This document shows, one piece after another, positions 872 to 50,954 of a DNA stretch of 51,436 bases. The notes under the pieces are model-generated. The model did not search any database and was not told where the DNA came from. It was given only the letters and a program-made list of their open reading frames with translations. The translations under genes and the position numbers were made by a program. Source of the stretch: Octopus bimaculoides (Eukaryota); the NCBI RefSeq assembly GCF_001194135.2, contig NC_068982.1, positions 8,061,624-8,113,059 on the forward strand, written 5' to 3'. Within the stretch, counting starts at the first letter, position 1. Each line of letters starts with the position of its first letter.

Positions 872-1109
872 GACAAGCATCTTTGATTGTGTCATTAGAC
901 TGCCAGTTAACAGTGATATTATTTTCAGCACATTCTCTTATATAAGCTTCCATGGCAATGCAAAATGCTTGATAAGAGCCAATTTCACTATTGCACATAT
1001 CCCTCATGCAAAGTTTTTTATATCCTTCTGATGGAACAACGCTTAAACATTCTTTAAATACTGAACTTTCCTCCAAACTTGAGCAGTACGTTGTAGCCGT
1101 TTCTAAGTT
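872..1109 (-). CDS. Exon, C8-2 domain (NLETATTYCSSLEESSVFKECLSVVPSEGYKKLCMRDMC...AFCIAMEAYIRECAENNITVNWQSNDTIKDAC)
   Basis: Acceptor atattctttcag, donor gtaagt, 238 nt, phase 0-1; full canonical C8 cysteine set. Confidence 0.94.
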
Positions 1110-2179
1110 CTGAAAGAATATTATGTGTTAAGATATTTTATTTATTAAGGAAGGAGTAAAAAGAGAAACACAAACAACAGCATATGTTATGCATCATACA
1201 TGTATTTATACACTCTTATAGAAAAATATTTCCAGATCACTTTATCATATAACACCAGAGGAACCTTTGTGCAGTTAAGTATTCAATCTGATCGTCATTG
1301 TAATGGTTGACTATCATTCAATACAACCCTGATCAACATTAAAATGGGATAACATATTTTAAGTATAGAATCCCTTGTCATACAATGGACTCTGCATAAG
1401 CCATGTACGGGGACGAGATCAATAAGATGAGAGGTAGCCATGAGTACAGTAATGGATTTAGTATGCCAGTAGGCATTCACTAGGGCTCATTTCCCAGTCC
1501 CCTCTTATTCATCATTGGCCATTAGATCATAACAGAAGAATTTAAGATTGGCTTCCCCAAGAGACCAGTAAATGCTGATGATTGCATTCTCATACCAGAA
1601 TCTGTAACAGAATCAAAAGAATTCCAAGTGTGAATGCAAAACCTGAAATTGAAGGTCTTAAAGTTAACTTAGCAAAGACCAACATTCTAGTAAGCAGGAA
1701 AACAGATAGAACTCTACCTCCTTCAGGTAAATGGCCCTGCTTAGTATGTAAGAATGGTGTAGGCAAGATTTCCATACGTTGTACTCAGTACAAGCTTTGG
1801 ACACACAAACGGTACTGAGTAATGACAGGAAGGTTAATGGAGAAAGTAGTGTTTGTATGTGGAAAATGCAGAGATGCCATAAAACCAAAGATACATAGGA
1901 AATAGATTTTGTCAAATGCCCTGGAGAGTCGCTAGAGGTAGTAGATAGTTTGTTACCAACACAGCTTAATTAGCCATAGGAATATGTCCTGAAAATGTAG
2001 TTTCTAGAATAAGAATGGGATAGGGAAAGTTCAGAGAGCTATTTACTGCTATTGGTAACAGAAGGTCTCTCTTTCTCTCTCTCTCTCTCATATATATANN
2101 NNNNNNNNNNNNNNNNNNNNNNNNNNNNNNNNNNNNNNNNNNNNNNNNNNNNNNNNNNNNNNNNNNNNNNNNNNNNNNN

Positions 2180-4205: not shown

Positions 4206-4431
4206 NNNNNNNNNNNNNNNNNNNNNNNNNNNNNNNNNNNNNNNNNNNNNNNNNNNNNNNNNNNNNNNNNNNNNNNNNNNNNNNNNNNNNNNNNNNNNNN
4301 NNNNNNNNNNNNNNNNNNNNNNNNNNNNNNNNNNNNNNNNNNNNNNNNNNNNNNNNNNNNNNNNNNNNNNNNNNNNNNNNNNNNNNNNNNNNNNNNNNNN
4401 NNNNNNNNNNNNNNNNNNNNNNNNNNNNNNN

Positions 4432-29300: not shown

Positions 29301-32300
29301 TCAATGTTGGGGGACTACTTTCAAGGGTTTTATTTTATCATATTAACACCAGTAATCATGCCCATCTATTTATTTCATCGATCTGTATTTATGACAAATG
29401 ATTAAGTTACATTGATTTAGGTCAGGACCACAAGGTGGAGAAAGATCAAGATGAGGTAACAGAATAGTTAATCTTACCTGGAAATAGTTCAAGAAGAAGA
29501 AGCTGTCTGTAAAAGAGAAGATGAAGGTAGCTGACATGTACATTCTTGACAGTCATACCTTTTCCCAAGTAGTATCTGACCAAATTAGAATGCCTGCTCT
29601 TTCTCATTTTTGTGGAAGTGACAGGTACCTTAGTCAAAAGTGCCAACTGTTGTCAGTGCCCAATTAACAAATGTTGCATCATGCACTGAAGCCACAGCAT
29701 CTTTTGAAGTAAAGTCAGTGAGGGTTTTCATTTGCAAAGAAGGTTTACCTCTGCTTGTAATTTTAGAAGAATAGTTGTCTTAGTTAAAATGTAGATAGAG
29801 AATCAGGTTTGGAATCTAATTTTTGTCAGGTGCTCTCAACACCCAATGGAGTAATTTGTGCAAGTCTTGGTAAAATGAACCTCACGTACTATGGATTGTT
29901 AATAGGGGAGTGGGTGTATTAGATATGAAAACCTTGAGTGTTAAGTTGCATATTGAAGATCATTCAGCTAATTTTCTGGATGTTTTTCAGGTTAAGTATT
30001 ATGAACAAATACCAGGAAATGTTTGCCTGTCAGTGATACTGAGGGTTACTATGTATTCATAGAATATTGTACAAGCACAATAGTTTGACGAGCTGGATAT
30101 GATGTACTTGCTCTAACCTACAATGGCTGACTCATCTTTGCATGCGCCTTGTAGGGCTGAATCATGTTATCCAGTAAAACTCTTCTAAGCACTTTCCTTT
30201 AGCAAAGACTGGAAAGAAAGTTTGGTCAACATTCTGGTCTGACAAAGTTTTTGAGTTATTTTTCTCTTTTTCAATGAAGTTGTCAGGGTCAGCAGCTATT
30301 TGAAACAGGAGATTAAGACAGGTAGCACAGTTTTGATGTCTAGAGTTAAGATCATAAAAGATGAATATCTATTTACATTTGCATAAGTGGCAAGCATCTA
30401 TTTACATCATCATGATCACTACTGATGGTGATTTATGATTTTTAATCCTAACAAAGAATTTTACTGAGCTTCATATTGGTTAAAATCGAAAAGCTTATGG
30501 TTTGTGTCTAAATAGTACATTGTATAGAATGGATGTTTATACTTACTGTTAATATCATGATCATAATTTCCACATAACCCTTTCAATAAAGCGTTCTCGA
30601 AAAGAATGGGAGTTGGTGTCATGTGAATCATATCTTCGCTCAATAAGAATTTGATAGGAATTGAGTTGACGACAAGATGTAAGTACTCATTGCGAGTGCT
30701 CAACGAAACACCTGCAAGCAAGAAATAAAGAATATAACAGACATGTATACTTACACACATGCATGCATGCACACACACACACACACACACACAAGCTTGG
30801 GCACACACACACACACACACATACAGACATACATATAATTATATTGAAAAGAGAAAAAAAAAATTCCAATGTGTAGACTGCACCTAGAAATACTCAAGAT
30901 ATTCAAACTTGAGGCATTAAATAAATATAGAAGTGAGAATCAAATTAGGCAAATCAATTTACATATAATAATACATATATTCAACTATTTACCCAATATG
31001 CATAAGGTTTTAAAAATATACTTAATACATCAAACATATTGAAAAAATATTAAACATTTATACATCATCATCATCATCATCATCATTTAACGTCCGCTTT
31101 CCATGCTAGCATGGGTTGGACGATTGGACTGAGGACTGGTGAACCAGATGGCTACACCAGGCTCCAATCTGATCTGGCAATGTTTCTACAGCTGGATGCC
31201 CTTCCTAACGCCAACCACTCTGAGAGTGTAGTTGGTGCTTTTATGTGCCACCGGCACAAAGGCCAGTCAGGCGGTACTGGCAACGGTCACGCTCAAAATG
31301 GTGTATTTTACGTGCCACCTGCACAAGAGCCAGTCCAGCGGCACTGGCAATGATCTCACTTGAATGTCTTTACATGTGTCACCGGCACAAGTGCCAGGAA
31401 GGCGACGCTGGGCACAGGTGCCATCACAAGCCGAGTTTCATGTCCAACGAAGGAGACGATGTTGGCATGGGTGCCAGTCGTCGAATTTAGTTCGATTTCG
31501 ATTCCGATTTCACTTGCCTCAACAGGTCTTCGCAAGTGGAGATTTGTGTCCAATGAGGGAAGGTACGCATAAGTGGGCTGGCTACACCCCTGGCGGAGGC
31601 CTTGGATTTAGATCTCACTTGGCTTGCCAGGTCTTCTCACGCACAGCGTATTTCCAAAGGTCTCTGTCAGATGTCATCGCCTCAGTGAGGCCCAATGTTT
31701 GAAGGTCGTGCCTCACCAGTTCATCCCAGGTCTTCCTGGGCCTACCTCTTCCACAGGTTCCCTCAACTGCTAGGGAGTGGCACTTTTTCACACTAAACAC
31801 TTATACACCTATATATATTTAATATGTTTGATGTATTAAACATATTTAAAAAAAATTATGTACATTAGGTCTATGGTTTTTATATCTATATAGTTTCAAT
31901 ATGTTTGATGTATTAAACATATTTTAAAAATTTGTGCATATAAGGTCTCTGGTTGAATATATGTATTATTATATGTGAATTGATTTGCCTAACTTGATTC
32001 TCATTTCTATACATACATACTTCCCACATATACATACGTCCATACACATATACATGCACACATACATATTTACTAACATTCATAAATACACACAAACATA
32101 CACACACATTGTAAATAAACTTAAAAATTAATCTGGACAGCAGTAGCGTTCAATGACTTTTTATCATGTGTGTGTATGCATGTATGTGTATCTATGTATG
32201 TGTGTCTGTGTGTGAAGGTGTGTGCCAGTATATAAATGTGTGTGTAAGCATATACTTTAAGAGATAGGGAAAATATAATGTTAATATAAAAACAAAAAAA

Positions 32301-33857
32301 ACCCATAAAAAGAGAAAAATGTAAGGGAAGGAAAATGGAGAATAAAAGATTTGTGAAATTGTTTCTATACATACCATCTCTATATTCCCCTGTTTCCATA
32401 AGGCTTCCATCAACCTCTACATGGGTACCATTGGTTGTAATTGTTTTGCCATCAACTCTGATTTCTAGTGTCTATTAAAATATCAAGAATGAATCACTGA
32501 AGGATTATACAGAATTGATAGATTTTCAATGAATGATAGAATGTTTAAAAAATAAAAATATCTAAGGAATCATCATCATCATCAGCATCATCATCATCAC
32601 TGTTTAACGTCCGCTTTCCATGCTAGTATGGGTTGGACGATTTGACTGAGGACTGGTGAACCAGATGGCTACACCAGGCTCCAATCTGATTTGGCAGAGT
32701 TTCTACAGCTGGATGCCCTTCCTAACGCCAACCACTCCGAGAGTGTAGTGGGTGGTTTTTAGGTACCACCGGCACGAAGGCCAGTCAGGCGGTACTGGCA
32801 ACGGCCACGCTCAAAATGGTGTATTTTACGTACCACCCGCACAAGTGCCAGTCCAGCGGCACGGGCAACGATCTCGCTCGAAAATCCTTACACATACCAA
32901 GGGCACAGGCGCCAGAAAGGCGACGCTGAGCACAGGTGCCATTACGATTTCGCTTTGGCTTGTCCCAACAGGTCTTCGCAAGCCGAGATTCGTGTCCAAT
33001 GAAGGAGACGACCTGGCTTAAATATTTTGTTTTTTTTTCAAACTGTCCAGATCTGACCTGTCACACCTCCCCAACAATGTCATTCTAAAAATATACAACC
33101 ACGTCATAGGAATCTCTGAGCTATGAGATAATGCACGATTAATTCAAAACAATGTGAATAAATAGGTGTAGCAGATTTGAAACCGAATCACTGGACAGCT
33201 GTGCAGATGCCACATTGAAATCAAAGTCATTTAATGTACATACACCCAGGCTTATCCCCCATCTTTTTTAGGAGGGGGTAGTCACAACAAGACACACACA
33301 AAGCATGCCATTCATTTTACAGCTCAAAGATGCGAACCCTGTTCTATGCTCGGGTCAATGCATAGAACGCAGTCCCAAATATCAGCAGCATATACTGGTT
33401 CACCCCAGCTGCATCATGCTTCTTCCATACCCCTTTGAGCAACATCAAATTCATTCATTCGTCCACAAACATTCACCAAGCTTTCCTATCATTTACAAAC
33501 TCTTGCCTCTCTCAATCCAACACCTCCAACCACCATTTTTGTTCTCCACAAGCAGCAACGACAACGACATATGGCACGAGCAGAAGCTTTGCTTCTCACA
33601 GAATAACCTGAATGCTAAAGGGTTGAAAAAGAAAAAAATCATCCTCAGAAGTAATATAATTATGTTTAATTTAACTATTGATAATTATTCTATTTGTAAA
33701 GAAGTGAAATGTAAGCTTATTCTACCTGAATGGGAAGTCTAATGATGACCACCTTAGATATCAGGTTAGAAACATTATAAAGAAAAGATGCAATATATCG
33801 TGTGTTGTGCTTGTTTGGCAATCTGAAATTGTGATTCTGCACAACACAACACAACAC

Positions 33858-33934
<77 letters not shown>

Positions 33935-36900
33935 AGGACATCCAGCTGTAGAAAACGAGAGTCTGGTGCGGCTCCTGACCTTGCTAGCTCCTGTCAAACC
34001 ATGCAACCCATGCCAGCAGGGAAAATGGACGTTAAATGATGATGATGATAACGATGGTGGTGGTGGTGGTGACAATGATGATGACGACGATGGTGATGAC
34101 GACGACGACGATGGTGGTGATGATGAATTCATGTACACACATAATGCTGATACCCTTATGTATCAAGATGTTATGATTCTACATACATCTTTCGCACACT
34201 ATTTCGTGGATTACATTAAAATGCATTATGGAAAAATTCTTGGAGGCTGTGATATGAGTCTTGAATTTACCATTGTTTCATTTTCGTTCTTTTCTCGTTT
34301 TCTCTTTTGTGTGTTCCACTATCTTTTTTCTATCCCTCACTCATTCTATCTTTCACTCATTCTGTCCCTCACTCATTCTGTCCCTCACTCATTCTGTCCC
34401 TCACTCATTCTGTCCCTCACTCATTCTGTCACTCACTCATTCTGTCCCTCACTCATTCTGTCCCTCACTCATTCTGTCTCTCACTCATTCTGTCCCTCAC
34501 TCATTCTGTCACTCACTGCCTTTCTACAAAGAGTTCTTGATTATGCTCCTCAAAAAGAAATCCTGTTTATGTTGCACTGGGAAACAGAATATTTAAAAAT
34601 AAACTAGAATATATACAACAACAAAACCCACAGATCAACAAACTGTAGCACTGTAAAAAAAAAAGCCTTTTGATTCAAGTGATTTAGTTCCCTACATCGT
34701 CAAAGATTTCCTAACTTCAACCTGAGAATGCTTGTCAATCCATTACAAGATCTTCAATAAAAACTGTACAAAAGTTGGAACTCAATGAAAAACATTGCCC
34801 AAATAGCTCAAAATTGCTCACTTAGGTACAAGTCTAACTGCCAACCCGAATTAAATGACATAACAGAACATCCTGCTCACCTGATAACAAAAGTCGCATG
34901 GAGGACAAATTTATAGAAGCAAAACATTGTGAATGAGCTGCCGTATAGTGTTACCTGTCCTTGTATGGTGACTGGAAAAGCACAAGAGAGGTAATCTCTT
35001 AATTCAGCTCATAGTGTCGTCTGCTTAGTATCTGTGACTGATGATGAGATAACTACTCTGAAATGCTAGTATCTCACAGTCTAGGTAGGTGGTGCTGTGA
35101 GCTGATCTAGGTGTATACACACCGTTCATCAACCAACGAGATATATTCACCGTAACAAGATGTAGCGAGTAGCTTCTTTCCCAGTTCGAACGTGCATCAA
35201 ACATATTTGGACTGGTAATAGCATTGCAACATCTGTAAATGGTTATCATAAAGAAATGCTTGAAGTTCATTGCAAGTATTCCTAAGAGCCATCTCACATA
35301 ACAGAAGCACAAGAAATATCTTTGCACCAGCTAATCTAATACACCTGGAATTTGAAAAAGGACAAAATTGATCGTATCCCAATAAAGCATTAAGGATGGA
35401 AGTGAGTTTACTATCATTTCCTATATTTTTCAACTGATATGGTTCCGTATTTCATATTTTTCAATCAATAAATTTGTATGGAAAATTTAATGAATTATTA
35501 AGTACCAACACTGATGGATCTACTAGCAGTGTACCAACTAGCATCATTAATTTACATAAAACTTCCAGCAAATTGTATAAGTTCTTTCCAAATCTCTTTA
35601 CTTTTTAAATTGTTTTTGTATATCTTATTTTAACCCAAATATTCTTGTGTTGTGTTGTACTTGCATTTATTGTATGGCATAACCTTCTCAAGTATCACTA
35701 TGTTTAACTATGCACAGAAAATTTGTATACTTGATTTTTAAGACTCAGTTTCATCCACAATATACTCTTTTGTACGATACCTCCCCAGGAGATAACAGTT
35801 CTGAACACTTTCACAAAGACAAAAGCGTGTAAACTTATCTTGTTATGTCTAGGGAGGGTCATTATGCCAATAAAAATTAAAATGAACACACACACGCACT
35901 GGTTCAATATCACTTCTTCATTTTACTAACCATTTGATTGTTTGTTTAATGTATTTATTGAACAATCAATCGGTTTTTAGTTTTCTCTGTCACACTCCTT
36001 TTGTCACTATTTACAACCTCATCAATGGCATGTCCTCATACTTTTCTAGGTCTGTTTGGAATCTATCTGAGAACTAGTCTTATGCTTTTCAATATGCATG
36101 TTTCTATACATGAATTCACGTATAAAATCATGCAAACCAAATACAAACACACGTAGCTTACTTTTTGACACCGAAGCGGACTAGCACAGTTTTCAAGTTT
36201 TAGTATCACTAACCACAAGCCGCTGTAATCTAAAAGTTTAATAGCAGCTTTACTGTAGGGAATTGCAAACATCTTTCCATCAAAGGTCTTAAACATGCGA
36301 GTGTCTTTGAAGCGGCAGCTTTGATCTCCAAGATCATCTGTTTCCTTGGGACCTGTAGCAAATTAATATGTTTATTTAATACAACAAAGAATTTAGTAAA
36401 ATAACTTCATTATCAAATTCAAATTACGATAAACGTAAATAAACAAACGAAGTTTGCTTTTAGAAGCATTGAGATGTCTTAGAAAGTTAAAGAAGTGATT
36501 TTAAATTCTCAAACGCAGGATAATGCTAATAATATAGCCTGAACAGGATAAACTATCCCTATTTTGCAGAAAAAAGTGTAGGTCTCATAGCTGGCCGCCT
36601 ACACTTTTTTCTGCAAAATAGGGGTAGTTTATCCTGTTCAGGCTATATTATTAGCATTATCCTGCGTTTGAGAATTTAAAATCACTTTGTTATCATTAAG
36701 CTAGTTTTAGGAACATAAATTGTGAAATAAGATTTGGGGGAAGATTTGAATTGAAAACTTATGAAAACAAGACATTTATACTAAAGAGTCAGAGCTGGTT
36801 TCAACCGGATTGGTAATGAAAGGGTTAAATCATTACAGCTTAGGGATGAGGATTTTATCATACTGGTCCTATATATAAAATTGTGTGTGCGTGTGTGTGT

Positions 36901-39583
36901 ATGCACCCCTTAATAATGGCTCCAAATTTTGACACAAGGCCAGTAATATTAGGAGATGGGACAAGTCAGTTACACTGACCCCAATTGGTACTTGTTTTAC
37001 TGACCCCTAAAAAGATGAAAGACAAAGTCGAACTCAGCAGAATTTGAGCTTTAATCTTAGTGATGGACGAAATGTCATTGAGTATTTTCTCTGGCATACT
37101 AACAATCCTGTCAGCTCACCACCTTAATAATAATGATGGCCTCTCTCGTTGAAGAAGATGTATGAGCATTCAGCTTTTGCAAAACGATCTGCACAAATGA
37201 TTTGTCTATTGGGATCAAAATGTTTTCATGCTGTATGTTATCTCACTCTCTCCATCAAGTTGACGTTGCCTGAACAGGTGCACACCTGTATCACACGTGA
37301 GGTGTCAAATTGATCACAGAGCAACACGAGATGAAGCATTTTGTTCAAGAACACTACATACCACCTGATCTACGAATTGAAACCAAGATCTCGCGATCGT
37401 GAATGCAACACCCTAACCACTAGGCCATGCATCCTCACTGATATTAATCCTTTCTACTATAGGCACAAGGCCTGAAATTTTGAGGGACAAGGTATAAGTC
37501 GATCTCAGGGCATAACTGGTACATATTTCATCGACCTCGAAAAAATGAAAGGCAAAGTCGACCACGGTGGAATTTGAACTCAGAACTTAAGGGCAGACGA
37601 AATTATAATAATTCCTTCTAGGGATCTTTTTTAAAACGGGGGCCACATTTTTCATTAATGTTTTACGTAGTGTTTTTGGTACCGAAAGACTTTCAAACTT
37701 CGTATACTTATCTATTTTGTGTTATAGAACAGAAAAATATTTTTGTATTCGAATTTATTTCATGTAAAAAATTGTCTTATTTCGATAATTTCAACCAATC
37801 ACTGACGTCCACTCAGCCGATATACATTAAGTGCCGACTACATAAACAAACGATTCTTCGTTTTATTTGCTTTTTTCATTTTAAATTTGCTTTAACCCTA
37901 ACCCTAACCCTAACTCTAACTCTAACCCTAGGGTTAGGGTTAATTGTTTCAGAATCGTTTGTTTATGTAGTCGGCACTTAATGTATATCGGCTGAATGGA
38001 CGTCAGTGATTGGTTGAAATTACAGAAATACGACAACTTTAACATGGAATAATTTATGGATTTCTTTTTTTTTTAAGAAGACTAAGAGAAAAAGATGTTT
38101 TATATGACACATTCTACCAGTGTTCCAAGTTTCAAAGTGTTTCGTTAATGAAAAATGTGGCCCCCGTTTTAAAAAAGATCCCCTTCTAGAATAAGCACAA
38201 GACCTGAAAATTCACATGGTATAAGTTATAACAGATTTACGTACTGTTCGTCTGATAGTTGCAGGAAATGCATTCCGCTGAGGGTACACCCCAGGAACCG
38301 ATTCCTCTCTCACTACAGCAATTTAGCATGGTTGTTAAGTTACCGGAATGCGCTTCTGAGGCAGTGTCATTGCATAGAGTTGAATCAAAACAAAACTTCA
38401 AGTCATCAGTCACAGCTGTAGGTGAAAAAATACGCAAAAAACAGATTGAATATTAGTAGAATGCAAATACCTTGTTTGTGAATGAATGTTTGTTATGAAT
38501 TTTAACTGTGTGCTAGAAATAAAGAATGATATATAAACCTTCTTTCATTGTTACATTTAACCATTGCTGTTTCCCAATTCATAAAAATATTTTTTTACGT
38601 GTTAGAAACGAAAATATATTTTATAATATATTGTGTACTGGACACAGTTTTGTGTGTCACATAGCTAGCTAGAGGCGATGGCCTCTTGGAGCTAATCAAC
38701 AGTAGCTTTTGTCCTATTTTTTCTGAACTGCCATGTTAGCTTGGCAATAACTATTTATACTCAGTACTGCTGCCATAGTCTCCTTTAGAGAGATTTAGAA
38801 ATAATAATATTTCTAGTTTTGAAAATATATTTATTGTGATACAATTATGTAGTAATTTGCAAAGGTGGGTACCATTAATCAAAAAGTTTACTGTTAATCT
38901 GTTAACCAAAAAGTCAACTTCGATAACTGTGAATCGGTAAATTCTTTAAAAATATTACGGAAGTTGCCGATAAACTGTTAACATTAATTAGTATTATAGA
39001 AAAAAAATGATAAAAAGCATCTGTTTTTGCTCTAAAACCACCTAAAAACAACTTTAAAAAGTGCAAAAACAATAAAAACCGTTTACTTCAATTCCATTAA
39101 AGTTAATGGAAGTTAACTCAAGTTGACTTGAGTTAACAGAAGTTAAATGTAACAGAAGTTAATTAATTAATCCAATAACGATTTCCAAAGTTAACTTAAA
39201 AGTTACATTGTGAACGAAAATGTTAACTTCATTAATTAACGATTAACGGATTAACAGTTTGTTAATTTGTTTCTCAAAGTAGTAGAAAGTGAGTTATTGT
39301 TTGTTTTACACCATTAACATAATCATCGCCGTCGTCGCCATCATAATTTAACATCCGTTTTCCATGATGGCAGAGTTAGATTGGTTGACAGGAGCTGGCA
39401 AAGCTGAGAGCTGTACCTAGCTCCATTGTTTCGCATGGTATCTACAAGTGGATGCTTTTCGTAATGCCAACCAATTTACAGACTGATCTAAGTACTTTTT
39501 ATGAGGCACCAGTATCAGTGATTTTCTCGAAGCACCAGCACAGCCAGGGTCACCAAGTACCTTGCTAAAAGGAAAAAGAAAAA

Positions 39584-42500: not shown

Positions 42501-45500
42501 CAACCCTCTTGAGAATGAAATAGCCTGGCTATGGAAAATCAAGTTGGTGAAGATAGTGTCAATTATTGTTGGGAACAGTGTCAGAAGGCATCAAGCGGGG
42601 AATATAAAGGAAATTGGAATCGAGTGCCCAGTAGACCTGTTACAGAAGGTTTGCCTCTTTGGCATGGCTAGAATAATCAGGAAAGTATTATATAGCTGGA
42701 AAAACAAACGGGTAGCATGGTACCGTAGGCTGCAGGTAGTAAGCCTGCTACGCATACAAGACTCCAGGTGTTCCAATAAAACTTGTGATAAAAAGAAATT
42801 CTGAGTCTAGAAATTTAGAGGAGAGGGATAATCGATTACATCGACCCTAGTGTTCAACTGGTATTTTGTCCAGCTTGTCAGACAGGGACGTGCCGCCAAG
42901 GTAGGCAAGGTAGGCACTGCCTACCTTGAATAAAATAGATCGATAGCAACATTTCCCTTTTATGGCAAAATATGCATCTAATTCAATAAAATGATGAAGG
43001 TTACTATGTATAAAATGCAAGATATTTGATTTTTTGAAGATTATGTAAGCATAATTCGCCCTTGCCTTTCAATCTCAGTATTTGAGCTATGCATAGTAAT
43101 GCTGTAGTACAGTGTGTTGTGTACACTCCTACAACACCTTTTTCTTTACATGTTATAAAGGCAGAAGTAAATCTACCTTCAACTCATTCATGTGTCTGTG
43201 TTTCACTTATTTTTTTGAGTGTTTTACTACATAAAGGTCACCAACTGCCTACCCTGAGTAATTACTGACAGCACGTGTCTGTTGTCAGATAATCATACGC
43301 GATATGCTTATTCAATATACAAGGTTAGCAATTTATGTATTTAGTATTTTATAGCTTACCTCAAAAATTCTATTCTGCATATATATTATCTTGTTTTGAA
43401 GCTTTAGAACAGTGGTTCCCAACTTGCGTTCTGCGGACCCCTGATGGTACGCAAAGGTAGTACTGGGGTCCGTGAGCTAAATTCAAAATTTCATATAAGC
43501 ATATTAAAAGCGGTCCGTGGGAAAACTTATTTAAATAAAAGGGTTGGGAATCACTGGTGGAAACTACAGTGAAAAGGTTGGGAACCACTGTTGTAGAACA
43601 TATAGGATTTAAATAAGATACAGAATGTCAGAAATGATAGACGTCTAACAAATACCCTTCCGATTTGAAAATGAACAAAGTAAAATGGAGGATTAGAGAA
43701 TGTATCGAATATAAACACATATACATACCAGCCATGTTGTATTCGCAGTATAAACCTTTATACTTCTCATTACATTGGCATTTATTTGGTTGAACACAAA
43801 CACCACCATTTCTGCATGCTACCGTACAAATTGCTGGAAACAAAATCAGGTTACAGTGCACTTTACAGAATACATATACGTTTATGTAAAACAAATTAAG
43901 TAGTGAACATTAACTTATGGCATGCATAAATGCAACGAAGACATGGTTGACTGTTCGTGATCAGAGGTATTCAACAGAAATTTCACAACTTTACTAACTT
44001 CAATGTAGTTGAATATTAGTAATTGAGGCGTTCATGTCTTTTATTAGATTATCAGTGGAGCGAGTAACACAATTACAACTAGTAATCGAAAATGGATCGC
44101 AGACTCAGTTCTCTGTGAGCTTTACTACAAACATCTCAACAATCCAATAAACTAAACACATGTACACAAACAAATTGCGTGCGCATAAAGAAAATGCACG
44201 CATGTACAAATCTGTGTACGAATATATTGAAAAGCTCGAATACATTGATTTGCTTATAAAGAAACCAATGCAAAAAAAAATACGGGACTCTGCTTTGAAA
44301 TTGATGGTATGAACTTGTACCGGTCATTCGAACCCTAACCGCTGCATACCCGACTAGGCATCACGAGCGAGCCACCACAGCTTCACGTGATTGATCTATG
44401 ACTCGACAAGTTGGCCTGGTATGGCCTCTAGGATGTTCTAAAATGTAACCCTTTTTCACCTTATAAAAACCGTTTGGCGCCTTACTCGTCGCAGAGTTTT
44501 GAGGGCGGCTGATTGACTCATCTCTTGCCAGGCAAGCAGCCTTCGGCATTCTCGTAGACAATTTCGGACTTTGAATAGGCAAGTTCGGGTTTTCAGACAG
44601 ACCCACGATGTCCCAGAAGTAGTTTGTACGGACACGATGTGGTTTTTCTATCCTTCCAGTCTGCAGTTATGATTAATTGTCATTGCAAATAGCCAACACC
44701 AAATATCGTGTCCGGCAATAGATAATACAGTTAAATGTTCGTGGGTTGGCATCAATCATTATTCACACAGCCAACAACAACAACAACAACATTCCAGACG
44801 TACACTACAACATAGTAATACAGCCATCCACGGCGACTCAGACGTTTAAAATGTATCACCATTAACCAGGTCCACCTGAGCAACCCCACAACAAACTAGA
44901 ATCAAAATACATCAGGCTTCTGTAACAGCCACGCTTTTGCGTGGTAACATAATATATATTTCATAGCGCATTATTGGTGGGAATGCTTTCCTTTTTTCGC
45001 ATATGAATTCAATAAAGGTTTAAATTCGAGCGTTTTCAGAAATCTACATATAATTTTAAGCACTAATTTCTATATACCCACAGAACCTATCCCACAAGTA
45101 AATATTCCCACTTACGTGTGCTGCAATATTCTCCTGTCCAACCATCGCAACATGTCTGACTTGTTTCTACGATTTCTCTGTGGAGGAAAAAAAAAAAGAA
45201 TTTGATATTATATACAGTTTCTAGAAGAACTCTAAATTTCGACTCTAACTTGCTTAATAGAGCACGAAATACCACTCTACACAGGCTATGTTATTTGTTT
45301 CTTTAACAATGGCGTGTTTGAATCTTCAGGAAAAGAAAACCAATTGCGTCTTTTATAATGATATTGTGAACACAACATGGTGAAATGGTTAGGAGGTTTC
45401 GTTCGCATTTATGACCCTGCAGCGAGGCCTTTATGCAAGTGTCTTTTTACTTTAGCTTCGGTTCGACCCAAACCATGTGGATGGAAATTGGTTGATTGAA

Positions 45501-46639: not shown

Positions 46640-46995
46640 TGTGCGTGTGCTTGTCACTCCCACCATCACTTGACAACCGATGTTGGTGTGTTTACATACC
46701 CGTGACATAGCGGTTCGGCAAAATGGAACGATAGAATAAGAACTAAGCTTACAAAGATTATGTTCTGGGGGCGATTTGTTCGACTAAAAGGCGCTGCCCC
46801 AGCATGGCCGCAGTCATATGATTGAAGCAAATAAAAGAATAAAGAAAAAATAGAAATTCAACTTACTTTCGATACGTACACAAATCACCAAAGCGCATGT
46901 CTAGGCTGTAGCCATTGACAAGAAGAAACGAATTGGAACTGCAGGAAGTATTTCTCGTAAGAATGTTGTGTTCAGTTACATTACAAAGTGTTGCC
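872..46995 (-). CDS. Partial multi-exon gene for a secreted VWD/C8/TIL glycoprotein (SCO-spondin/otogelin/mucin-like): EMI-EGF-TB-VWD-C8-TIL-E-VWD-C8; 15 exons, about 782 aa, incomplete at both ends
   Basis: Join (minus) of 46867-46995, 45116-45177, 43729-43833, 38245-38415, 36162-36352, 32375-32471, 30547-30711, 23001-23080, 20888-20977, 13997-14162, 12742-12979, 12357-12498, 11729-12034, 3564-3731, 872-1109. All introns are GT-AG, phases match at every junction, and there are no stops. Hallmark motifs: TFDG, GLCGNYD/GLCGNFD, TIL CGPAC..C..GCYCP, many N-x-S/T sequons. Confidence 0.92.
1570..2060 (+). mobile_element. Decayed RTE-X-like LINE fragment (end of RT plus Cys-rich region)
   Basis: GLKVNLAKTNILVS...SGKWPCLVCKNGVGKISIRCTQYKLWTHKR followed by stops and frameshifts. 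Confidence 0.7.
2964..3347 (-). mobile_element. tRNA-headed SINE, family 3, full length with 13-bp TSD
   Basis: Head gtggaggcacaatggcccagtggttagggcagc with a B-box-like ggtttcgattcc; flanked by tacacacataata at 2951-2963 and 3348-3360; sister copy at 27352-27735. Confidence 0.85.
3564..3731 (-). CDS. Exon, VWD2 end (VLGLCGNFDSDLNNDFFSYNNLVLHKSNFVKEFMSPACPTEEEGDTDLDPCLIDDS)
   Basis: Acceptor tttgttttgcag, donor gtaagt, 168 nt, phase 0-0. Confidence 0.94.
3948..4615 (-). mobile_element. tRNA-headed SINE, family 1, with internal (TA)n and assembly gap
   Basis: Head ...ggttcagtcccactgtgtggcaccttgggcaagtgtc, then a microsatellite, then the conserved 3' half; homologous to 46335-46850. Confidence 0.8.
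4998..5870 (+). mobile_element. Internally deleted mariner transposon
   Basis: TIRs caaggtgtagtcaaaaagtatccaa / ttggatacttttgactacacctca with TA on both sides (4996-4997, 5871-5872). N-terminus MTEHIEQRYSIKFCQKLGDTKTQTVKKIQKAFGDDVM; decayed YSPDLAP region near 5580. Confidence 0.9.
6045..6590 (-). mobile_element. Interspersed repeat family 4 (LINE-3'-UTR-like or non-autonomous retroposon, (AAT)n tail)
   Basis: Reverse complement of the copies at 48466-48925 and 48957-49515; (AAT)n tail near 6035-6057. Confidence 0.75.
6614..8760 (-). mobile_element. Decayed Helitron, PIF1-like helicase C-terminal half
   Basis: Degenerate Walker A (STSGGTNKA), TALSGIAGTLL, TFHSRFKVPL, IIVNEVS, FGGVCVLFAVDWK, LNPSELPLHK, FPFQLRCRQFTIKLAFS, GQLYIAMSR and terminal NIIYKEVL*. 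Possible 3' hairpin catc-gta-gatg then GGTAG|T at about 6614. Confidence 0.9.
7223..7520. mobile_element. hAT/Charlie-type MITE inserted in the Helitron helicase
   Basis: TIR caggggttttcaaac / gtttgaaaacccctt; 8-bp TSD atttattg / atctattg. Confidence 0.88.
9200..9740 (-). mobile_element. Decayed RTE-X-like LINE 3' coding fragment
   Basis: Minus strand reads LYDACIQTAVLHGSEMWAQNAEDM..LESNETSML..., matching the 3' ORF end seen at 17611-17866. Confidence 0.7.
10874..11050 (+). mobile_element. Possible DNA-transposon C-terminal remnant with a CxC zinc motif
   Basis: QPAIDVWQNDGEMEVVMKIETPLPPSPMYYTMSGCPCNKSRC resembles the W...P.P......CxC...C ends of large invertebrate transposons; the 5' part lies in an N-gap. 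Confidence 0.3.
11729..12034 (-). CDS. Exon, VWD2 middle (STNTTNDLKISLGFGSCSSPFNSDINCFNQLYVQL...EAIYIKLDPSYGGK)
   Basis: Acceptor ttcccttcttttcag, donor gtaagt, 306 nt with 102 open codons, phase 0-0; IYIKLDPSY.GK is typical of the pre-GLCG segment. Confidence 0.92.
12357..12498 (-). CDS. Exon, end of E module and start of VWD2 (CECVNSKWQCTEKKCPKTCSLIGQNTITTFDSLGYTIAPAACDYTLVH)
   Basis: Acceptor ttttactttacag, donor gtgagt, 142 nt, phase 2-0; absent from the ORF track. Confidence 0.93.
12742..12979 (-). CDS. Exon, TIL domain plus start of E/VWC-like module (STDCPGGMEYSDCGPACPNFC...CVPGCYCP...CITEEECPCEYKGKKYSNGSSTYMDCNY)
   Basis: Acceptor ttatttattag, donor gtaata, 238 nt, phase 1-2; canonical TIL cysteines. 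Confidence 0.95.
13378..13778 (-). mobile_element. SINE family 1 copy
   Basis: Head ggctgtgtggtaagaagcttgcttccc, internal (TA)n with a 10-N gap, conserved 3' half. Confidence 0.8.
13997..14162 (-). CDS. Exon, degenerate C8-1 (SGHSTMLDYCYGVVRESASASEAEEVACLSVKNSAFEHGTLNITIPDWRDDNSIC)
   Basis: Acceptor ttattttctcag, donor gtaatt, 166 nt, phase 0-1; ends in the C8 WR....C motif. Confidence 0.88.
14285..14505. mobile_element. piggyBac-type MITE, about 220 bp
   Basis: TTAA|ccctttcgttac ... gtaatgaaaggg|TTAA (TTAA at 14281-14284 and 14506-14509). Confidence 0.85.
15440..16860 (+). mobile_element. Highly decayed R4/Dong-like (RLE-clade) non-LTR element, RT region
   Basis: Fragments resembling NFKPLSCLPIMCK, EEQ.GCK, QLLIDKAVLKDCK, MVWINYRMA.DIVSH.WILEHL, and IFEACQVAF (GIFQGD region). 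Confidence 0.65.
16362..16540. mobile_element. Fold-back MITE inserted in the R4-like element
   Basis: Arms of about 77 bp (16362-16438 and 16464-16540) starting tatttggggatgg; AT-rich spacer of about 25 nt. Confidence 0.8.
17121..17590 (-). mobile_element. SINE family 1 copy, with about 50 bp repeated across a 10-N gap
   Basis: Standard head and tail; tggcttccttcagtttgcgtctaccaaatccactcacaaggctttggtcggc occurs on both sides of the gap. Confidence 0.8.
17611..18030 (+). mobile_element. RTE-X-like LINE: ORF 3' end plus part of 3' UTR
   Basis: RSISCGVQERRLSWYGHLARIDENSCVKKCHTLAVEETCGRGRHRKT...REKTQQAK*. Confidence 0.8.
18500..19660 (+). mobile_element. Decayed pogo/Tigger-like transposase (CENP-B HTH plus DDE start)
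   Basis: KVPGMGEALFEWFVDVRTSLHARLP...FSNS (CENP-B HTH-like) and SPIINGDEMPLHWNE (first DDE Asp motif); multiple frameshifts; TIRs not identified. Confidence 0.7.
19700..20681. mobile_element. Cluster of piggyBac-type MITE copies: partial 19700-19860, 20003-20436 spanning a gap, complete 20457-20677
   Basis: TTAA|cccttttcttacc starts at 20003 and 20457; aggg|TTAA ends at 20436 and 20677; same family as 14285-14505. Confidence 0.8.
20888..20977 (-). CDS. Exon, linker and start of degenerate C8-1 (YTLHEIIASEGSSYPEANAICSIISSFKSY)
   Basis: Strong acceptor ctctttctttacctag, donor gtgagt, 90 nt, phase 0-0; A..IC..I..F resembles a C8 start. Confidence 0.85.
21140..21305 (-). mobile_element. SINE family 1, 5' half
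   Basis: ggctgtgtggtaagacgtttgctttccagccacatggttccaggttcagtcccactgc head. Confidence 0.75.
23001..23080 (-). CDS. Exon, VWD1 tail (NEFQSRSGVTLTTAKSFVDHYRVLNEP)
   Basis: Acceptor taattttattgcag, donor gtaaga, 80 nt, phase 1-0; matches the VWD tail pattern (N/D)(D/E)F...SG......F. Confidence 0.9.
23105..23555 (-). mobile_element. Two tandem copies of tRNA-headed SINE family 2 (about 23105-23315 and 23336-23555)
   Basis: Both read ...gagttcaaattccgccgaggtc..tttgcct.tcat...ggggtc.ataa.ttaagtaccagtt on the minus strand. More decayed copies at about 21505-21660, 36930-37125, 37450-37600, 42810-42870, 48190-48470, 49570-49720 and 50790-50900. Confidence 0.8.
24941..25281 (-). mobile_element. tRNA-headed repeat with hammerhead-like motif (locus A): minus-strand copy plus inverted 3' tail
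   Basis: Minus 25177-24941 runs A box tggcgtagtg, B box gagttcgattcc, then gacac-ctgatga-aggctg...cagtc-aaaac-att. The plus-strand tail (ccgaaacattgtgtt...atagaactgta) begins at about 25175. Confidence 0.8.
25890..26318 (+). mobile_element. RTE-X-like LINE 3' UTR with (GAT)n tail
   Basis: Homologous to 1-224 and to the reverse complement of 31065-31400; internal ggtggcacgtaaaagcacc sub-repeats. Confidence 0.8.
26586..26940 (+). mobile_element. GC-rich, probably RTE-derived short non-autonomous element with (CAA)n tail
   Basis: About 55% GC in AT-rich surroundings; aaatccagagtggagccccgtaggtggttt resembles RTE 5' UTRs; ends ccaacaacaacaa; no RT coding. Confidence 0.45.
27001..27336. mobile_element. 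336-bp fold-back element
   Basis: 142-bp arms (27001-27142 and 27195-27336), about 12 mismatches, all transitions; the spacer holds its own hairpin aaaggtaataa-ttgggga-ttattaccttt. Confidence 0.88.
27352..27735 (+). mobile_element. SINE family 3 copy
   Basis: Colinear with the reverse complement of 2964-3347; decayed copies at about 37130-37440 (-) and 45370-45620 (+). Confidence 0.82.
29080..29230 (-). mobile_element. Tc1/IS630-like transposase fragment
   Basis: NGFRLNTEAYTKCLEEVLL.WVKR (frameshift) GTPYVWLQDSAP, the second-Asp QDxAP motif region. Confidence 0.65.
29450..30300 (-). mobile_element. Possible very old LINE remnant (endonuclease/linker region)
   Basis: Purine/pyrimidine pattern and short fragmented similarity only; no intact motif. 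Confidence 0.25.
30547..30711 (-). CDS. Exon, VWD1 end (GVSLSTRNEYLHLVVNSIPIKFLLSEDMIHMTPTPILFENALLKGLCGNYDHDIN)
   Basis: Acceptor tttcttgcttgcag, donor gtaagt, 165 nt, phase 1-1; GLCGNYD motif. Confidence 0.93.
31065..31793 (-). mobile_element. 5'-truncated RTE-X-like LINE insertion with 14-bp TSD
   Basis: ORF end VKKCHSLAVEGTCGRGRPRKTWDELVRHDL...REKTWQAK*, 3' UTR and (GAT)n tail; TSD taaacatttataca (31051-31064) / taaacacttataca (31794-31807). Confidence 0.9.
32375..32471 (-). CDS. Exon, VWD1 middle (TLEIRVDGKTITTNGTHVEVDGSLMETGEYRD)
   Basis: Acceptor gatattttaatag, donor gtatgt, 97 nt, phase 0-1; it exactly bridges the phases of its neighbours. Confidence 0.9.
32570..33015 (-). mobile_element. 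RTE-X-like LINE 3' UTR
   Basis: Near-identical to 31070-31550; (GAT)n tail. Confidence 0.82.
33838..34125. repeat. (ACAAC)n/(CA)n run, short RTE-X 3' end (33935-34030), then (GAT/GGT/GAC)n
   Basis: Directly visible; source of the low-complexity ORFs at 33717-34607. Confidence 0.85.
34333..34516. repeat. 16-bp minisatellite (tccctcactcattctg), about 11 units
   Basis: Directly visible tandem units with occasional substitutions. Confidence 0.92.
36162..36352 (-). CDS. Exon, VWD1 start (SPKETDDLGDQSCRFKDTRMFKTFDGKMFAIPYSKAAIKLLDYSGLWLVILKLENCASPLRCQK)
   Basis: Acceptor ttaatttgctacag, donor gtaagc, 191 nt, phase 1-0; TFDG motif. Confidence 0.92.
36380..36788. mobile_element. piggyBac-type MITE remnant interrupted by an insertion containing a 195-bp hairpin
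   Basis: acaacaaagaatttagtaaaataactt stops at about 36414, resumes ctttgttatcattaagc at about 36685 and ends gtaatgaaaggg|TTAA. Confidence 0.72.
36493..36687. mobile_element. Near-perfect fold-back element
   Basis: Arms of about 90 bp (aagtgattttaaattctcaaacgcagg...gtgtagg and its complement), one mismatch seen, 15-nt loop tctcatagctggccg. Confidence 0.9.
37621..38182. mobile_element. 562-bp non-autonomous TIR element with telomeric core
   Basis: Perfect 38-bp TIRs (37621-37658 and 38145-38182); 6-bp TSD cttcta (37615-37620 and 38183-38188); internal 72-bp inverted repeat; (TAACCC)n / (GGGTTA)2 core at 37893-37942. Confidence 0.9.
38245..38415 (-). CDS. Exon, six-Cys TB-like domain (AVTDDLKFCFDSTLCNDTASEAHSGNLTTMLNCCSERGIGSWGVPSAECISCNYQTN)
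   Basis: Acceptor ttttttcacctacag, donor gtacgt, 171 nt, phase 1-1; C..C..CC..SWG..C..C pattern. Confidence 0.88.
39701..40040. mobile_element. hAT-type MITE
   Basis: TIR cagtggcagactgg / ccagtctgccactt; 8-bp TSD attaaagg / attgaagg. Confidence 0.85.
40193..40662. mobile_element. tRNA-headed hammerhead-bearing repeat (locus C): two head-to-head copies forming a 470-bp fold-back
   Basis: Arms 40193-40409 and 40420-40662, 10-nt spacer; each arm has tRNA-like A/B boxes, an (AAT)n linker, a hammerhead-like motif and the tail. Confidence 0.88.
41860..42780 (+). mobile_element. Decayed R4/Dong-like non-LTR element: RT fragment (41860-42400) and C-terminal end (42500-42700)
   Basis: CKDLLLTNRMILENCHNK, WIDYKK.FDSIPHSWILKSL, IQGDSLSPPIFC, LFYTADLILY (YMDD equivalent), GMEFGLDKCA, and LLQKVCLFGMARIIRKVL. 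Confidence 0.8.
42883..43281. mobile_element. hAT-type MITE inserted in a SINE family 2 fragment
   Basis: Perfect 8-bp TSD ttgtcaga (42875-42882 and 43282-43289); imperfect TIR cagggacgtgccgcc / gacagcacgtgtctg; subterminal taggca repeats. Confidence 0.85.
43410..43590. mobile_element. hAT/Charlie-type MITE
   Basis: TIR cagtggttcccaac / gttgggaaccactg; TSD ctttagaa / ttgtagaa; an extra TIR-like copy near 43545. Confidence 0.82.
43729..43833 (-). CDS. Exon, EGF-like domain (PICTVACRNGGVCVQPNKCQCNEKYKGLYCEYNMA)
   Basis: Acceptor ttttgtttccag, donor gtatgt, 105 nt, phase 1-1; canonical six-Cys EGF spacing. Confidence 0.93.
45116..45177 (-). CDS. Exon, EMI-like domain end (EIVETSQTCCDGWTGEYCST)
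   Basis: Acceptor ttttcctccacag, donor gtaagt, 62 nt; the CC.GW.G..C motif is typical of EMI domain ends. Confidence 0.9.
46335..46850 (+). mobile_element. SINE family 1 copy with two internal microsatellites and a partly duplicated tail
   Basis: ggttccgggttcagtcccactgcgtggcaccttgggcaagtgtc head; tail ...ggccgcagtc. Confidence 0.82.
46867..46995 (-). CDS. Exon, EMI-like domain first part (ATLCNVTEHNILTRNTSCSSNSFLLVNGYSLDMRFGDLCTYR-K)
   Basis: Acceptor ctacttttcag, donor gtaagt, 129 nt, phase 2 to phase 2, joins the next exon in frame. Confidence 0.85.
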
Positions 46996-50210: not shown

Positions 50211-50954
50211 TGTTGCAGCAGAATTGTGAATCGTTAAACAATAACACCAAAATTTTCTAGTGCTGCTGTCAATGGAACTCTATATTAGTTACTTTTACGC
50301 TACCATTGCTACATAAATTTTACGGTAATTTTAAATTTCATTAAAACCTATAATAAGACAAGAGGAGACTATTCTTGGTTATTGCACAAGATTACACCCA
50401 ATTAGGCAGCTGGTACAAAAGTTCCTGGTTGTTTAACTGCTGGCATCATTAGATGACTTGAACTAGCTAATATGAACATGATTTACGCATTATTCAATGG
50501 AAGTCACCTTTAATTTGGAATCGTAGTTATCACTTTATCACTGTCTCAACATCCGGACAATCAGATAATATGTGTAAAATCGTCAATAGAAATATATATT
50601 TAACTTCTTTACGCATAGTTTTTTCTTCGGCGTCAGCCTTAATAAGATGATTTGAGGAAGATTAGGAGTTGCCTACGTATATAAATCGTATCTCCGGACA
50701 TCAACGACAGTGTTCAGCGATGATGTTCAGGACAAAATAAGGTCGATGTAGATTAGCACCAGAAACAACGCAGAATGAAAAAGTCGGAATAGAGCCCGTA
50801 AAGTATTCTGTCAGACGCCCTAATAATTCTAACCCCTCATCCTAAACTGGTACATTGTTTATCGACCCTGAAAGATTGAAAGGCAGTGATCTCAGCGAAA
50901 TTCAAGTTCATAATACAGATAATGCCTTGCACCGTTTCTTTAAATCAGTACATA

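What the first reader, a model, noticed from the sequence alone, without database searches (positions are those of the whole stretch)
38245..38415. Follistatin-N-type TB module inserted before the first VWD of a gel-forming-type protein
Seen: a symmetric phase 1-1 exon encodes CF.....C...(18)...CC.......SWG.....C..C with six Cys, between an EGF exon and VWD1. Established: fibrillin/LTBP TB domains have eight Cys with a CCC triplet, whereas the follistatin N-terminal TB domain has six (C, C, CC, C..C) and contacts TGF-beta-family ligands. SCO-spondin begins EMI-VWD and otogelin begins EGF-VWD. Inference: EMI-EGF-TB-VWD is a hybrid N-terminus, probably from exon shuffling, and could let a matrix or mucus polymer bind TGF-beta/BMP/activin ligands.
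Basis: partly seen in the sequence, partly recalled or inferred. Interest (0 to 1): 0.7.

Follow-up and report, generated by a model that had tools for sequence, protein, structure and literature searches.

The report
Conserved SCO-spondin six-cysteine exon
The exon is real, but it is not a novel insertion: mammalian SCO-spondin has the same small six-cysteine module, as its own exon, between its EMI domain and first VWD domain, so this is an ordinary, unannotated part of a known protein family.

Summary
Observation confirmed. Window 38245-38415 on the minus strand is a 171-nt phase 1-1 exon with good splice sites. It encodes a six-Cys peptide (C-x5-C-x17-CC-x14-C-x2-C). It lies between an EGF exon and the first VWD exon of a gene that reads EMI-EGF-module-VWD-(C8)-TIL-VWD-C8.

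Interpretation only partly holds. Database-retrieved mammalian SCO-spondin N-termini carry the same module (C-F-x4-C-x16-CC-x15-C-x2-C) at the same place, between EMI and VWD1.
- A profile of five mammalian modules picks this exon as the only hit among 1593 six-frame segments of the window (E=0.003).
- 1 of 20000 composition shuffles and 82 of 20000 Cys-fixed shuffles reach its score.
- In a mammalian Sspo gene the module is also a separate phase 1-1 exon (180 nt).
- The other three intron positions compared around it agree in place and phase.

So EMI-module-VWD is the standard SCO-spondin N-terminus, not a hybrid. The part absent from mammals is the extra EGF exon.

The TB resemblance is weak: Pfam TB gives E=0.042, below its threshold. 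No follistatin-specific signal was found. AlphaFold models were unusable (pLDDT 46-48), so the fold is untested. TGF-beta-family ligand binding is pure speculation. Interest is low to moderate.

The parts
50534..50616 (-). Tentative first coding exon (ATG at 50616; MRKEVKYIFLLTILHILS..., signal-peptide-like), ending in phase 2 at a weak donor GTGATA
   Evidence: Scan for Met plus a hydrophobic stretch upstream of the EMI exon; sequence read. Phase-compatible with the EMI exon but otherwise unverified.
46867..46995 (-). EMI exon 1 (ATLCNVTEHNILTRNTSC...GDLCTYR-K), leaves in phase 2 inside a Lys codon
   Evidence: Sequence and splice sites. Aligns with the mammalian SCO-spondin EMI (C..TE, C, LC.Y.K) in A4. 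Same intron position and phase as L001 2126/2520.
45116..45177 (-). EMI exon 2 (EIVETSQTCCDGWTGEYCST), CC-x-GW motif; leaves in phase 1 two residues after the last Cys
   Evidence: tblastn with P0002/P0003/P0005 hits 45120-45167; same intron position and phase as the mammalian gene.
43729..43833 (-). EGF exon, 105 nt, phase 1-1 (ICTVACRNGGVCVQPNKCQCNEKYKGLYCEYNMA). Absent from the mammalian SCO-spondins compared.
   Evidence: Pfam EGF_2 gives 23.6 bits, E=6.9e-05, above the cut-off. It appears as an insertion relative to mammals in A4. The corresponding mammalian intron is only about 170 nt.
38245..38415 (-). THE FINDING: six-Cys post-EMI module exon, 171 nt, phase 1-1; two N-glycosylation sequons (NDT, NLT) in the long C2-CC loop
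   Evidence: Homologous mammalian exon is L001:2780-2959 (180 nt, phase 1-1).
36162..36352 (-). VWD1 first exon (SPKETDDLGDQSCRFKDTRMFKTFDGKMF...NCASPLRCQK), ends in phase 0 two residues after a Cys
   Evidence: Pfam VWD E=8e-08 on the joined VWD1 pieces. tblastn 36159-36293. Same intron position as the mammal (PCWL|VRV).
32375..32471 (-). VWD1 second exon (TLEIRVDGKTITTNGTHVEVDGSLMETGEYRDG)
   Evidence: part of the Pfam VWD match.
30509..30724 (-). VWD1 distal exon containing GLCGNYD (boundaries approximate, inside ORF 30464-30838)
13968..14189 (-). Tentative second half of the C8 of D1 (…MLDYCYGVVRES…EEVACLSV…IPDWRDDNSIC); boundaries not defined
   Evidence: Weak hit of a C8 profile (E=0.41); translation. 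The position just upstream of TIL is right.
12747..12971 (-). TIL domain exon of D1 (CPGGMEYSDCGPACPNFC...)
   Evidence: Pfam TIL E=5.1e-08; tblastn with P0003 E=5.5e-10.
12360..12506 (-). Start of VWD2 (CVNSKWQCTEKKCPKTCSLIGQNTITTFDS...)
   Evidence: tblastn with P0003 E=7.6e-04; Pfam VWD partial match.
11714..12103 (-). ORF holding a probable middle VWD2 exon; boundaries not defined
   Evidence: No similarity or family test matched this segment. The assignment rests on its position and on reading the translation by eye.
900..1097 (-). C8 domain of D2; the gene continues beyond the window's low end
   Evidence: Pfam C8 E=4.4e-16; tblastn.

Best explanation
The exon encodes the small six-cysteine module that sits between the EMI domain and the first VWD assembly of SCO-spondin-family proteins. 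The gene in the window is a SCO-spondin-like gene on the minus strand. Its N-terminus reads signal peptide(?)-EMI-EGF-module-D1(VWD-C8-TIL)-D2(VWD-C8...) and the gene runs off the low end of the window.

The module is an ancestral, separately encoded phase 1-1 unit shared with mammalian SCO-spondin. It is not a lineage-specific insertion. The lineage-variable element is the neighbouring EGF exon.

Inferred mechanism (not shown): the module is a compact unit held by three disulfides and carrying N-glycans. It probably acts as a structural spacer or adaptor in the N-terminal polymerisation head. It would hold the multimerising EMI domain in register with the D1-D2 assemblies, which in VWF and mucins direct disulfide-linked multimer formation.

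Its sequence has a weak TB-like flavour (helix-CC ... G-x-(S/A)-W-G ... C-x-x-C). It may therefore be a truncated member of the TB/hybrid-domain superfold, but this is not established.
For: Gene context:
- Pfam finds VWD, TIL and C8 above their cut-offs and EGF_2 at about its cut-off on the joined exons.
- tblastn with proteins named Sspo/SCO-spondin (P0002, P0003, P0005) gives collinear minus-strand hits: EMI 45167-45120, module 38392-38243, VWD1 36293-36159 and 30724-30509, TIL 13034-12747, VWD2 12494-12360, C8 1097-900.

Module homology:
- Five mammalian SCO-spondin sequences have C-F-x4-C-x16-CC-x15-C-x2-C directly after EMI.
- In alignment A1 all six Cys plus F9, S40, W41 and S45 are invariant.
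- The mammalian-module HMM hits only this ORF in the window (E=0.0029).
- Shuffle p is about 5e-5 (full shuffle) and 0.004 (Cys positions fixed).
- The global alignment A4 shows EMI, module and VWD1 start in register, with the EGF as a clean insertion.

Gene structure:
- In the mammalian Sspo locus L001 the module is its own 180-nt phase 1-1 exon.
- The phase-2 intron inside EMI (split Lys codon), the phase-1 intron two residues after the last EMI Cys, and the phase-0 intron two residues after the first VWD1 loop Cys all coincide with those in the window.

Context for the mechanism:
- A review describes the SCO-spondin EMI and VWD/TIL domains as the polymerisation apparatus. A zebrafish 5-residue insertion in EMI abolishes the Reissner fibre (PMC8487547; PMC8826430).
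Against: - All comparison sequences are mammalian. No other invertebrate or non-mammalian vertebrate SCO-spondin could be retrieved, so 'ancestral' rests on two lineages.
- Pairwise BLASTP of the N-terminus is weak on its own (E about 0.02 per segment).
- The Pfam EMI model does not score either the window protein or the mammalian proteins. EMI identity rests on alignment and the CC-x-GW motif.
- The diagnostic downstream SCO-spondin domains (LDLa, TSR, CTCK) lie outside the window.
- The spacer/adaptor function is inference only. No structure could be obtained (pLDDT 46-48).
- No transcript evidence.
Confidence: 0.78

Rival explanations
1. First reader's reading. This is a follistatin-N-type TB domain recruited by exon shuffling into a gel-forming polymer, giving it the ability to bind TGF-beta/BMP/activin ligands.
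For: - Six Cys in the order C, C, CC, C..C, as in the follistatin and FSTL3 N-domains.
- Pfam TB is the top family for the peptide (E=0.042).
- A small TB/hybrid profile built from PDB-verified sequences ranks the exon first in the window (E=0.18), with shuffle p about 0.002-0.005.
- hhalign of the module alignment against TB gives P=0.009 over 32 columns.
- Phase 1-1 exons are the classic currency of exon shuffling.
Against: - The module is not a new recruitment. It is already in mammalian SCO-spondin at the same site.
- The follistatin N-domain profile gives no signal for the exon (p about 0.6). hhalign probability is 2% over 16 columns.
- The CC-to-C loop is 14 residues here, against 29-31 in the follistatin and FSTL3 sequences.
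- No FS/Kazal domains follow.
- The TB score is below Pfam's threshold, and the mammalian modules get no Pfam TB hit at E<=10.
- From background knowledge, only particular TB domains of LTBPs bind latent TGF-beta. Most TB domains are structural.
- No binding data of any kind.
Confidence: 0.07
2. The gene is not the SCO-spondin orthologue. It is a lineage-specific SCO-spondin-like or mucus-type paralogue that shares only the N-terminal head. Truncated SCO-spondin-like adhesive and mucus proteins are described in molluscs.
For: - SCO-spondin-like proteins that lack the TSR-rich part occur in limpet pedal mucus (PMC7333891).
- SCO-spondin and SCO-spondin-like proteins occur in octopus skin mucus (PMC11431876).
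- The window shows an extra EGF and ends in D2, so the rest of the architecture is unknown.
Against: Nothing in the window distinguishes orthologue from paralogue. The conserved intron positions and the module argue for common descent of the head either way. This rival changes the gene's name, not the nature of the exon.
Confidence: 0.3
3. Chance Cys-rich open frame in an intron, or a decayed pseudo-exon that is not part of the mature protein.
For: No transcript evidence. Searches of two very large protein collections with the window's peptide found no relative.
Against: - Canonical acceptor with a pyrimidine tract, and a GTACGT donor.
- Exact phase match to both neighbouring exons.
- The only hit of the mammalian module profile in the window, on the right strand and between the right exons.
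- Shuffle p about 5e-5.
- All six Cys intact.
Confidence: 0.03

Closest known systems
N-terminal head of vertebrate SCO-spondin (SSPO): EMI, six-Cys module, D1-D3
   Same: - Same order of EMI, six-Cys module and VWD1.
- Same Cys pattern, with F, S-W and S conserved.
- The module is encoded by its own phase 1-1 exon in both genes.
- The other three intron positions compared also agree in place and phase.
   Different: - The window gene has an extra phase 1-1 EGF exon between EMI and the module.
- Loop lengths differ by one residue each.
- About 24-30% identity in the module.
- The downstream LDLa/TSR/CTCK part is not visible in the window.
TB (8-Cys) domain of fibrillins and LTBPs (Pfam PF00683; PDB 1APJ, 1KSQ, 1UZJ) and the fibrillin hybrid domain (5MS9)
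   Same: - Order of the first cysteines.
- A doublet at the position of the TB triplet. The fibrillin hyb1 sequence in 5MS9 also shows CC, not CCC.
- The G-x-G-SWG motif before C-x-x-C resembles the TB motif G-x-AWG-x-x-C-x-x-C.
- TB is the best Pfam hit.
   Different: - Six Cys, not eight: no CCC triplet and no C-terminal Cys.
- The exon ends 5 residues after the last Cys.
- Different loop lengths.
- The score is below the gathering threshold, and the mammalian copies do not score at all.
- The fold is untested.
Follistatin / FSTL3 N-terminal domain (PDB 2B0U, 3HH2, 3SEK)
   Same: Six Cys in the order C, C, CC, C-x2-C; an N-terminal position in a secreted protein.
   Different: - No detectable sequence similarity.
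- The CC-to-C loop is 14 residues against 29-31.
- It is followed by VWD, not FS domains.
- No evidence of ligand contact.
D1-D2 propeptide assemblies of VWF and gel-forming mucins
   Same: VWD-C8-TIL units at the N-terminus of a polymer-forming secreted protein.
   Different: The descriptions of VWF and gel-forming mucins read here mention no EMI or six-Cys module ahead of D1. Their sequences were not examined.

Membership tests
SCO-spondin family (N-terminal head) | Single N-terminal EMI domain with a CC-x-GW...C ending | tested here: inconclusive
   Six Cys and CCDGWTGEYC align with the mammalian SCO-spondin EMI (A4; tblastn). The Pfam EMI model scores neither the window protein nor the mammalian proteins.
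SCO-spondin family (N-terminal head) | Six-Cys module C-F-x4-C-x16/17-CC-x14/15-C-x2-C between EMI and VWD1 | tested here: met
   (E=0.0029, sole hit).
SCO-spondin family (N-terminal head) | Repeated VWD-C8-TIL assemblies after the head | tested here: met
   Pfam VWD, TIL, VWD and C8. The C8 of D1 was found only tentatively, and assembly gaps lie in that interval.
SCO-spondin family (N-terminal head) | Shared exon-intron structure with a bona fide Sspo gene | tested here: met
   All four intron positions compared agree in place and phase; the two that bound the module give a phase 1-1 exon in both genes.
SCO-spondin family (N-terminal head) | Downstream LDL-receptor class A repeats, thrombospondin type-1 repeats and C-terminal cystine knot | not testable with these tools
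   The gene runs off the low-coordinate end of the window within D2.
TB domain (PF00683) | Eight Cys including a CCC triplet | tested here: not met
   Six Cys, CC doublet, no C-terminal Cys within the exon.
TB domain (PF00683) | Score above the Pfam gathering threshold | tested here: not met
   14.1 bits against a cut-off of 22.2, E=0.042. The mammalian modules get no hit at E<=10.
TB domain (PF00683) | TB fold (helix carrying the Cys cluster, beta-hairpin, 1-3/2-6/4-7 disulfides) | tested here: inconclusive
   AlphaFold2 pLDDT 48.3 (single sequence) and 46.0 (6-row alignment). Foldseek against PDB gave 0 matches.
Follistatin N-terminal domain | Six Cys in the order C, C, CC, C-x2-C | tested here: met
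Follistatin N-terminal domain | Detectable sequence relationship, and the long CC-to-C insert | tested here: not met
   The follistatin/FSTL3 profile gives no signal. hhalign probability is 2%. The loop is 14 residues against 29-31.
Follistatin N-terminal domain | Followed by FS (FOLN-Kazal) domains; contacts activin-class ligands | tested here: not met
   The module is followed by VWD1. Ligand contact is not testable with these tools.

The most novel reading that the evidence does not exclude
The post-EMI module of SCO-spondins is a genuine, previously unannotated six-Cys member of the TB/hybrid/follistatin-N superfold, conserved from this invertebrate-like genome to mammals. It gives SCO-spondin polymers (Reissner fibre, mucus) a docking site for TGF-beta-superfamily ligands or their pro-domains.
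Probability: 0.07. Interest if true: 0.65.

Novelty: new member of a known kind. Interest (0 to 1): 0.3.

Why it matters
It removes a false lead. The EMI-module-VWD order is not a hybrid created in this lineage. It is the normal head of SCO-spondin-type proteins.

Two modest points remain useful.
- SCO-spondins carry a conserved, separately encoded six-Cys module after EMI. Pfam does not annotate it, and no paper in the searched library links SCO-spondin to TB, hybrid-domain or follistatin terms. It deserves a family model and a structure, because it lies in the part of the protein needed for fibre assembly.
- The head's exon structure is conserved between mammals and this genome. A phase 1-1 EGF exon is the only module that differs, which makes it a tidy example of modular gain or loss.

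Tried and rejected
- The search for homologous proteins with two spliced window queries (177 aa and 350 aa, including TIL and VWD) returned nothing.
- The exhaustive representative search accepts only contiguous window translations. With the 56-aa exon it returned one spurious bacterial repeat protein that matches only 'GVGNWGVP'.
- PDB sequence searches with the peptide and with the module profile gave no TB or follistatin hit.
- AlphaFold2 on the peptide alone, and again with a 6-row alignment, gave low-confidence models. Foldseek found nothing.
- The third homologue search used a probe typed from my memory of the human SCO-spondin N-terminus. Only the sequences the database returned (P0002-P0012) are used as evidence.
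- The genomic look-up of P0003 was not on record. P0002 worked.
- I checked whether known zebrafish sspo alleles fall in this module. The review table places icm15 in EMI and dmh4 in a TIL domain. It does not locate stl297 or stl300.
- I rejected the idea that the module is a degenerate EGF, because the CC doublet and the spacing do not fit. The Teneurin-EGF Pfam hit that reaches partly into the module (residues 39-139 of the joined protein) is far below its threshold (25.7 against 65 bits).

Full report
**1. What is in the sequence**

The feature is on the minus strand. Window 38245-38415 is bounded by an acceptor AG preceded by a pyrimidine tract and by a GTACGT donor. Only one minus-strand frame is open. 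It reads VTDDLKFCFDSTLCNDTASEAHSGNLTTMLNCCSERGIGSWGVPSAECISCNYQTN. The peptide has six Cys arranged C-x5-C-x17-CC-x14-C-x2-C and two N-glycosylation sequons (NDT, NLT) in the long loop.

The exon is 171 nt and has phase 1 at both ends. Reading the neighbouring exons base by base shows that the phases fit.
- The EGF exon upstream is 43729-43833, 105 nt, phase 1-1.
- The first VWD exon downstream is 36162-36352 and enters in phase 1.

Its spacing counts are each off by one.

**2. The gene around it**

A six-frame scan and Pfam on joined exons give this order on the minus strand:
- a tentative signal-peptide exon;
- EMI in two exons, 46867-46995 and 45116-45177;
- EGF;
- the six-Cys module;
- VWD1 (Pfam E=8e-08);
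- a tentative C8 fragment;
- TIL (E=5.1e-08);
- the start of VWD2;
- C8 (E=4.4e-16).

The gene then runs off the low end of the window. Several assembly gaps lie where the rest of D1's C8 is expected.

**3. What the module is**

Searches of the large protein collections with window sequences found nothing useful. I therefore used my last homologue search with a probe recalled from the human SCO-spondin N-terminus. Only the returned database sequences are used as evidence. They include proteins that NCBI names 'Sspo, partial' and 'SCO-spondin isoform 1'.

Five of these mammalian sequences carry a six-Cys module directly after the EMI ending (..CCPGWGG..C) and before VWD1. One example is [47 protein letters not shown], with the pattern C-F-x4-C-x16-CC-x15-C-x2-C.

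The evidence that the window exon is the same module:
- Aligned with the window peptide, all six Cys plus F9, S40, W41 and S45 are invariant (A1).
- An HMM of the five mammalian modules, searched against all 1593 six-frame segments of the window with filters off, finds the exon's ORF as the only hit (E=0.0029; next best 1.2).
- The score of 14.9 bits is reached by 1 of 20000 composition-preserving shuffles. It is reached by 82 of 20000 shuffles that keep the Cys in place. Non-Cys residues therefore contribute too.
- tblastn with the mammalian proteins gives collinear minus-strand matches to EMI, module, VWD1, TIL, VWD2 and C8.
- A global alignment puts EMI, module and VWD1 start in register, with the EGF as a clean insertion in the window protein (A4).

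**4. Gene structure as an independent test**

The genomic locus of P0002 (L001, NCBI assembly GCA_964027135.1) was mapped exon by exon. The mammalian module is its own exon, L001:2780-2959, 180 nt, phase 1-1. Four intron positions coincide with the window gene in both place and phase:
- a phase-2 intron inside EMI that splits the Lys codon after ..C-x-x-Y-(x)-K (AA|A in both);
- a phase-1 intron two residues after the last EMI Cys;
- the phase-1 intron at the end of the module;
- a phase-0 intron two residues after a Cys in the first VWD1 exon (PCWL|VRV against RCQK|TLE).

The mammalian intron between EMI and the module is only about 170 nt and holds no EGF exon. This is hard to explain except by common descent of the whole head. 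The module is an old, constitutive part of SCO-spondin-type proteins. The extra EGF is the piece that differs.

**5. Is it a TB or follistatin-N domain?**

By sequence, only weakly.

| Test | Result |
|---|---|
| Pfam TB on the window peptide | Best family, E=0.042, 14.1 bits (cut-off 22.2) |
| Pfam TB on mammalian modules | No hit at E<=10 |
| TB/hybrid profile from PDB-verified sequences (1APJ, 1KSQ, 9R3S, 1UZJ, 5MS9) against the window | Exon ranks first, E=0.18 |
| Shuffle p against that TB/hybrid profile | 0.002-0.005 for the exon; 0.007-0.04 for two mammalian modules |
| hhalign, module alignment against TB | P=0.009, probability 4.5%, 32 columns |
| Follistatin/FSTL3 N-domain profile | No signal for the exon (p about 0.6) |
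| hhalign, module alignment against follistatin N-domain | 16 columns, probability 2% |
| PDB sequence searches with peptide and profile | No TB or follistatin hit |
| AlphaFold2, alone and with the 6-row alignment | pLDDT 48.3 and 46.0 |
| Foldseek against PDB | No match |

The follistatin CC-to-C loop is 29-31 residues, against 14 here. The fold is undetermined.

The fair statement is this: the module has a TB-like motif, fails the defining TB features (eight Cys, CCC triplet), and has nothing specifically follistatin-like beyond the number and order of its Cys.

**6. How it probably works**

Shown: the module is a conserved, separately encoded, Cys-rich unit with N-glycan sequons, located between EMI and D1.

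From the literature:
- EMI and the VWD-TIL assemblies are regarded as SCO-spondin's polymerisation apparatus (PMC8487547).
- A 5-residue insertion in the zebrafish EMI prevents Reissner fibre formation (PMC8487547; PMC8826430).
- SCO-spondin-like proteins occur in mollusc mucus and adhesive secretions (PMC7333891; PMC11431876).
- Invertebrate mucin-like proteins group nearest to SCO-spondins (PMC4948705).

Inferred: the module is a rigid disulfide-bonded adaptor that positions EMI relative to D1-D2 during multimer assembly. Binding of TGF-beta-family ligands is possible in principle but has no support.

**7. Novelty and verdict**

The exon is a new member (with about 24-30% identity) of a module already present in known SCO-spondins. 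The 'hybrid N-terminus' claim fails.

The library search found no paper linking SCO-spondin with TB, hybrid-domain or follistatin terms. Pfam has no model for the module. The small residual value is an annotation gap in a biologically interesting protein head.

The source organism was not determined.

Noticed in passing
window 43729-43833 (-): The EGF exon is itself a symmetric phase 1-1 exon and is absent from the mammalian Sspo gene, where the corresponding intron is about 170 nt. Either the EGF exon or the module exon could be skipped without breaking the reading frame. Whether the EGF was gained here or lost in mammals is unknown.
   Followed up: partly
window 7930-8454 (-), probably continuing in 6748-7080 (-): A PIF1-like helicase fragment (Pfam PIF1 E=1.4e-35) lies inside an intron of the gene, on the same strand. 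It looks like a Helitron-type or PIF1-family transposon remnant. The second ORF had no Pfam hit.
   Followed up: partly
window 41997-42401 (+): A reverse-transcriptase-like fragment (Pfam RVT_1 E=3e-05, below the cut-off) lies in the intron between the EGF and module exons. It is probably a decayed non-LTR retrotransposon.
   Followed up: partly
window 2099-2179, 4206-4431, 10228-10873, 13628-13637, 17424-17433, 20178-20310, 23830-24746: Seven runs of N (assembly gaps), several flanked by dinucleotide microsatellites. The gaps between 13 kb and 30 kb may hide the missing first half of the C8 domain of D1, and the one at 10.2-10.9 kb may hide VWD2 exons.
   Followed up: no
window 38173-38418 (+): An 82-codon open frame with 5 Cys runs antisense to the module exon. 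Nothing supports it as coding, and the mammalian module profile matches only the minus-strand frame.
   Followed up: partly
L001:2780-2959 and proteins P0002, P0003, P0007, P0008: Four of the five mammalian modules carry an N-x-S/T sequon (ANSS, ANTS, ANAS) in the same long C2-CC loop where the window peptide has two sequons. The elephant sequence P0005 has none. A glycosylated loop may be a shared feature.
   Followed up: no
P0004 (Myotis) and P0009 (Smutsia): These database entries for the SCO-spondin N-terminus lack one or more module or EMI cysteines, or lack the whole region. They are probably poor gene models. They were left out of the profiles.
   Followed up: no
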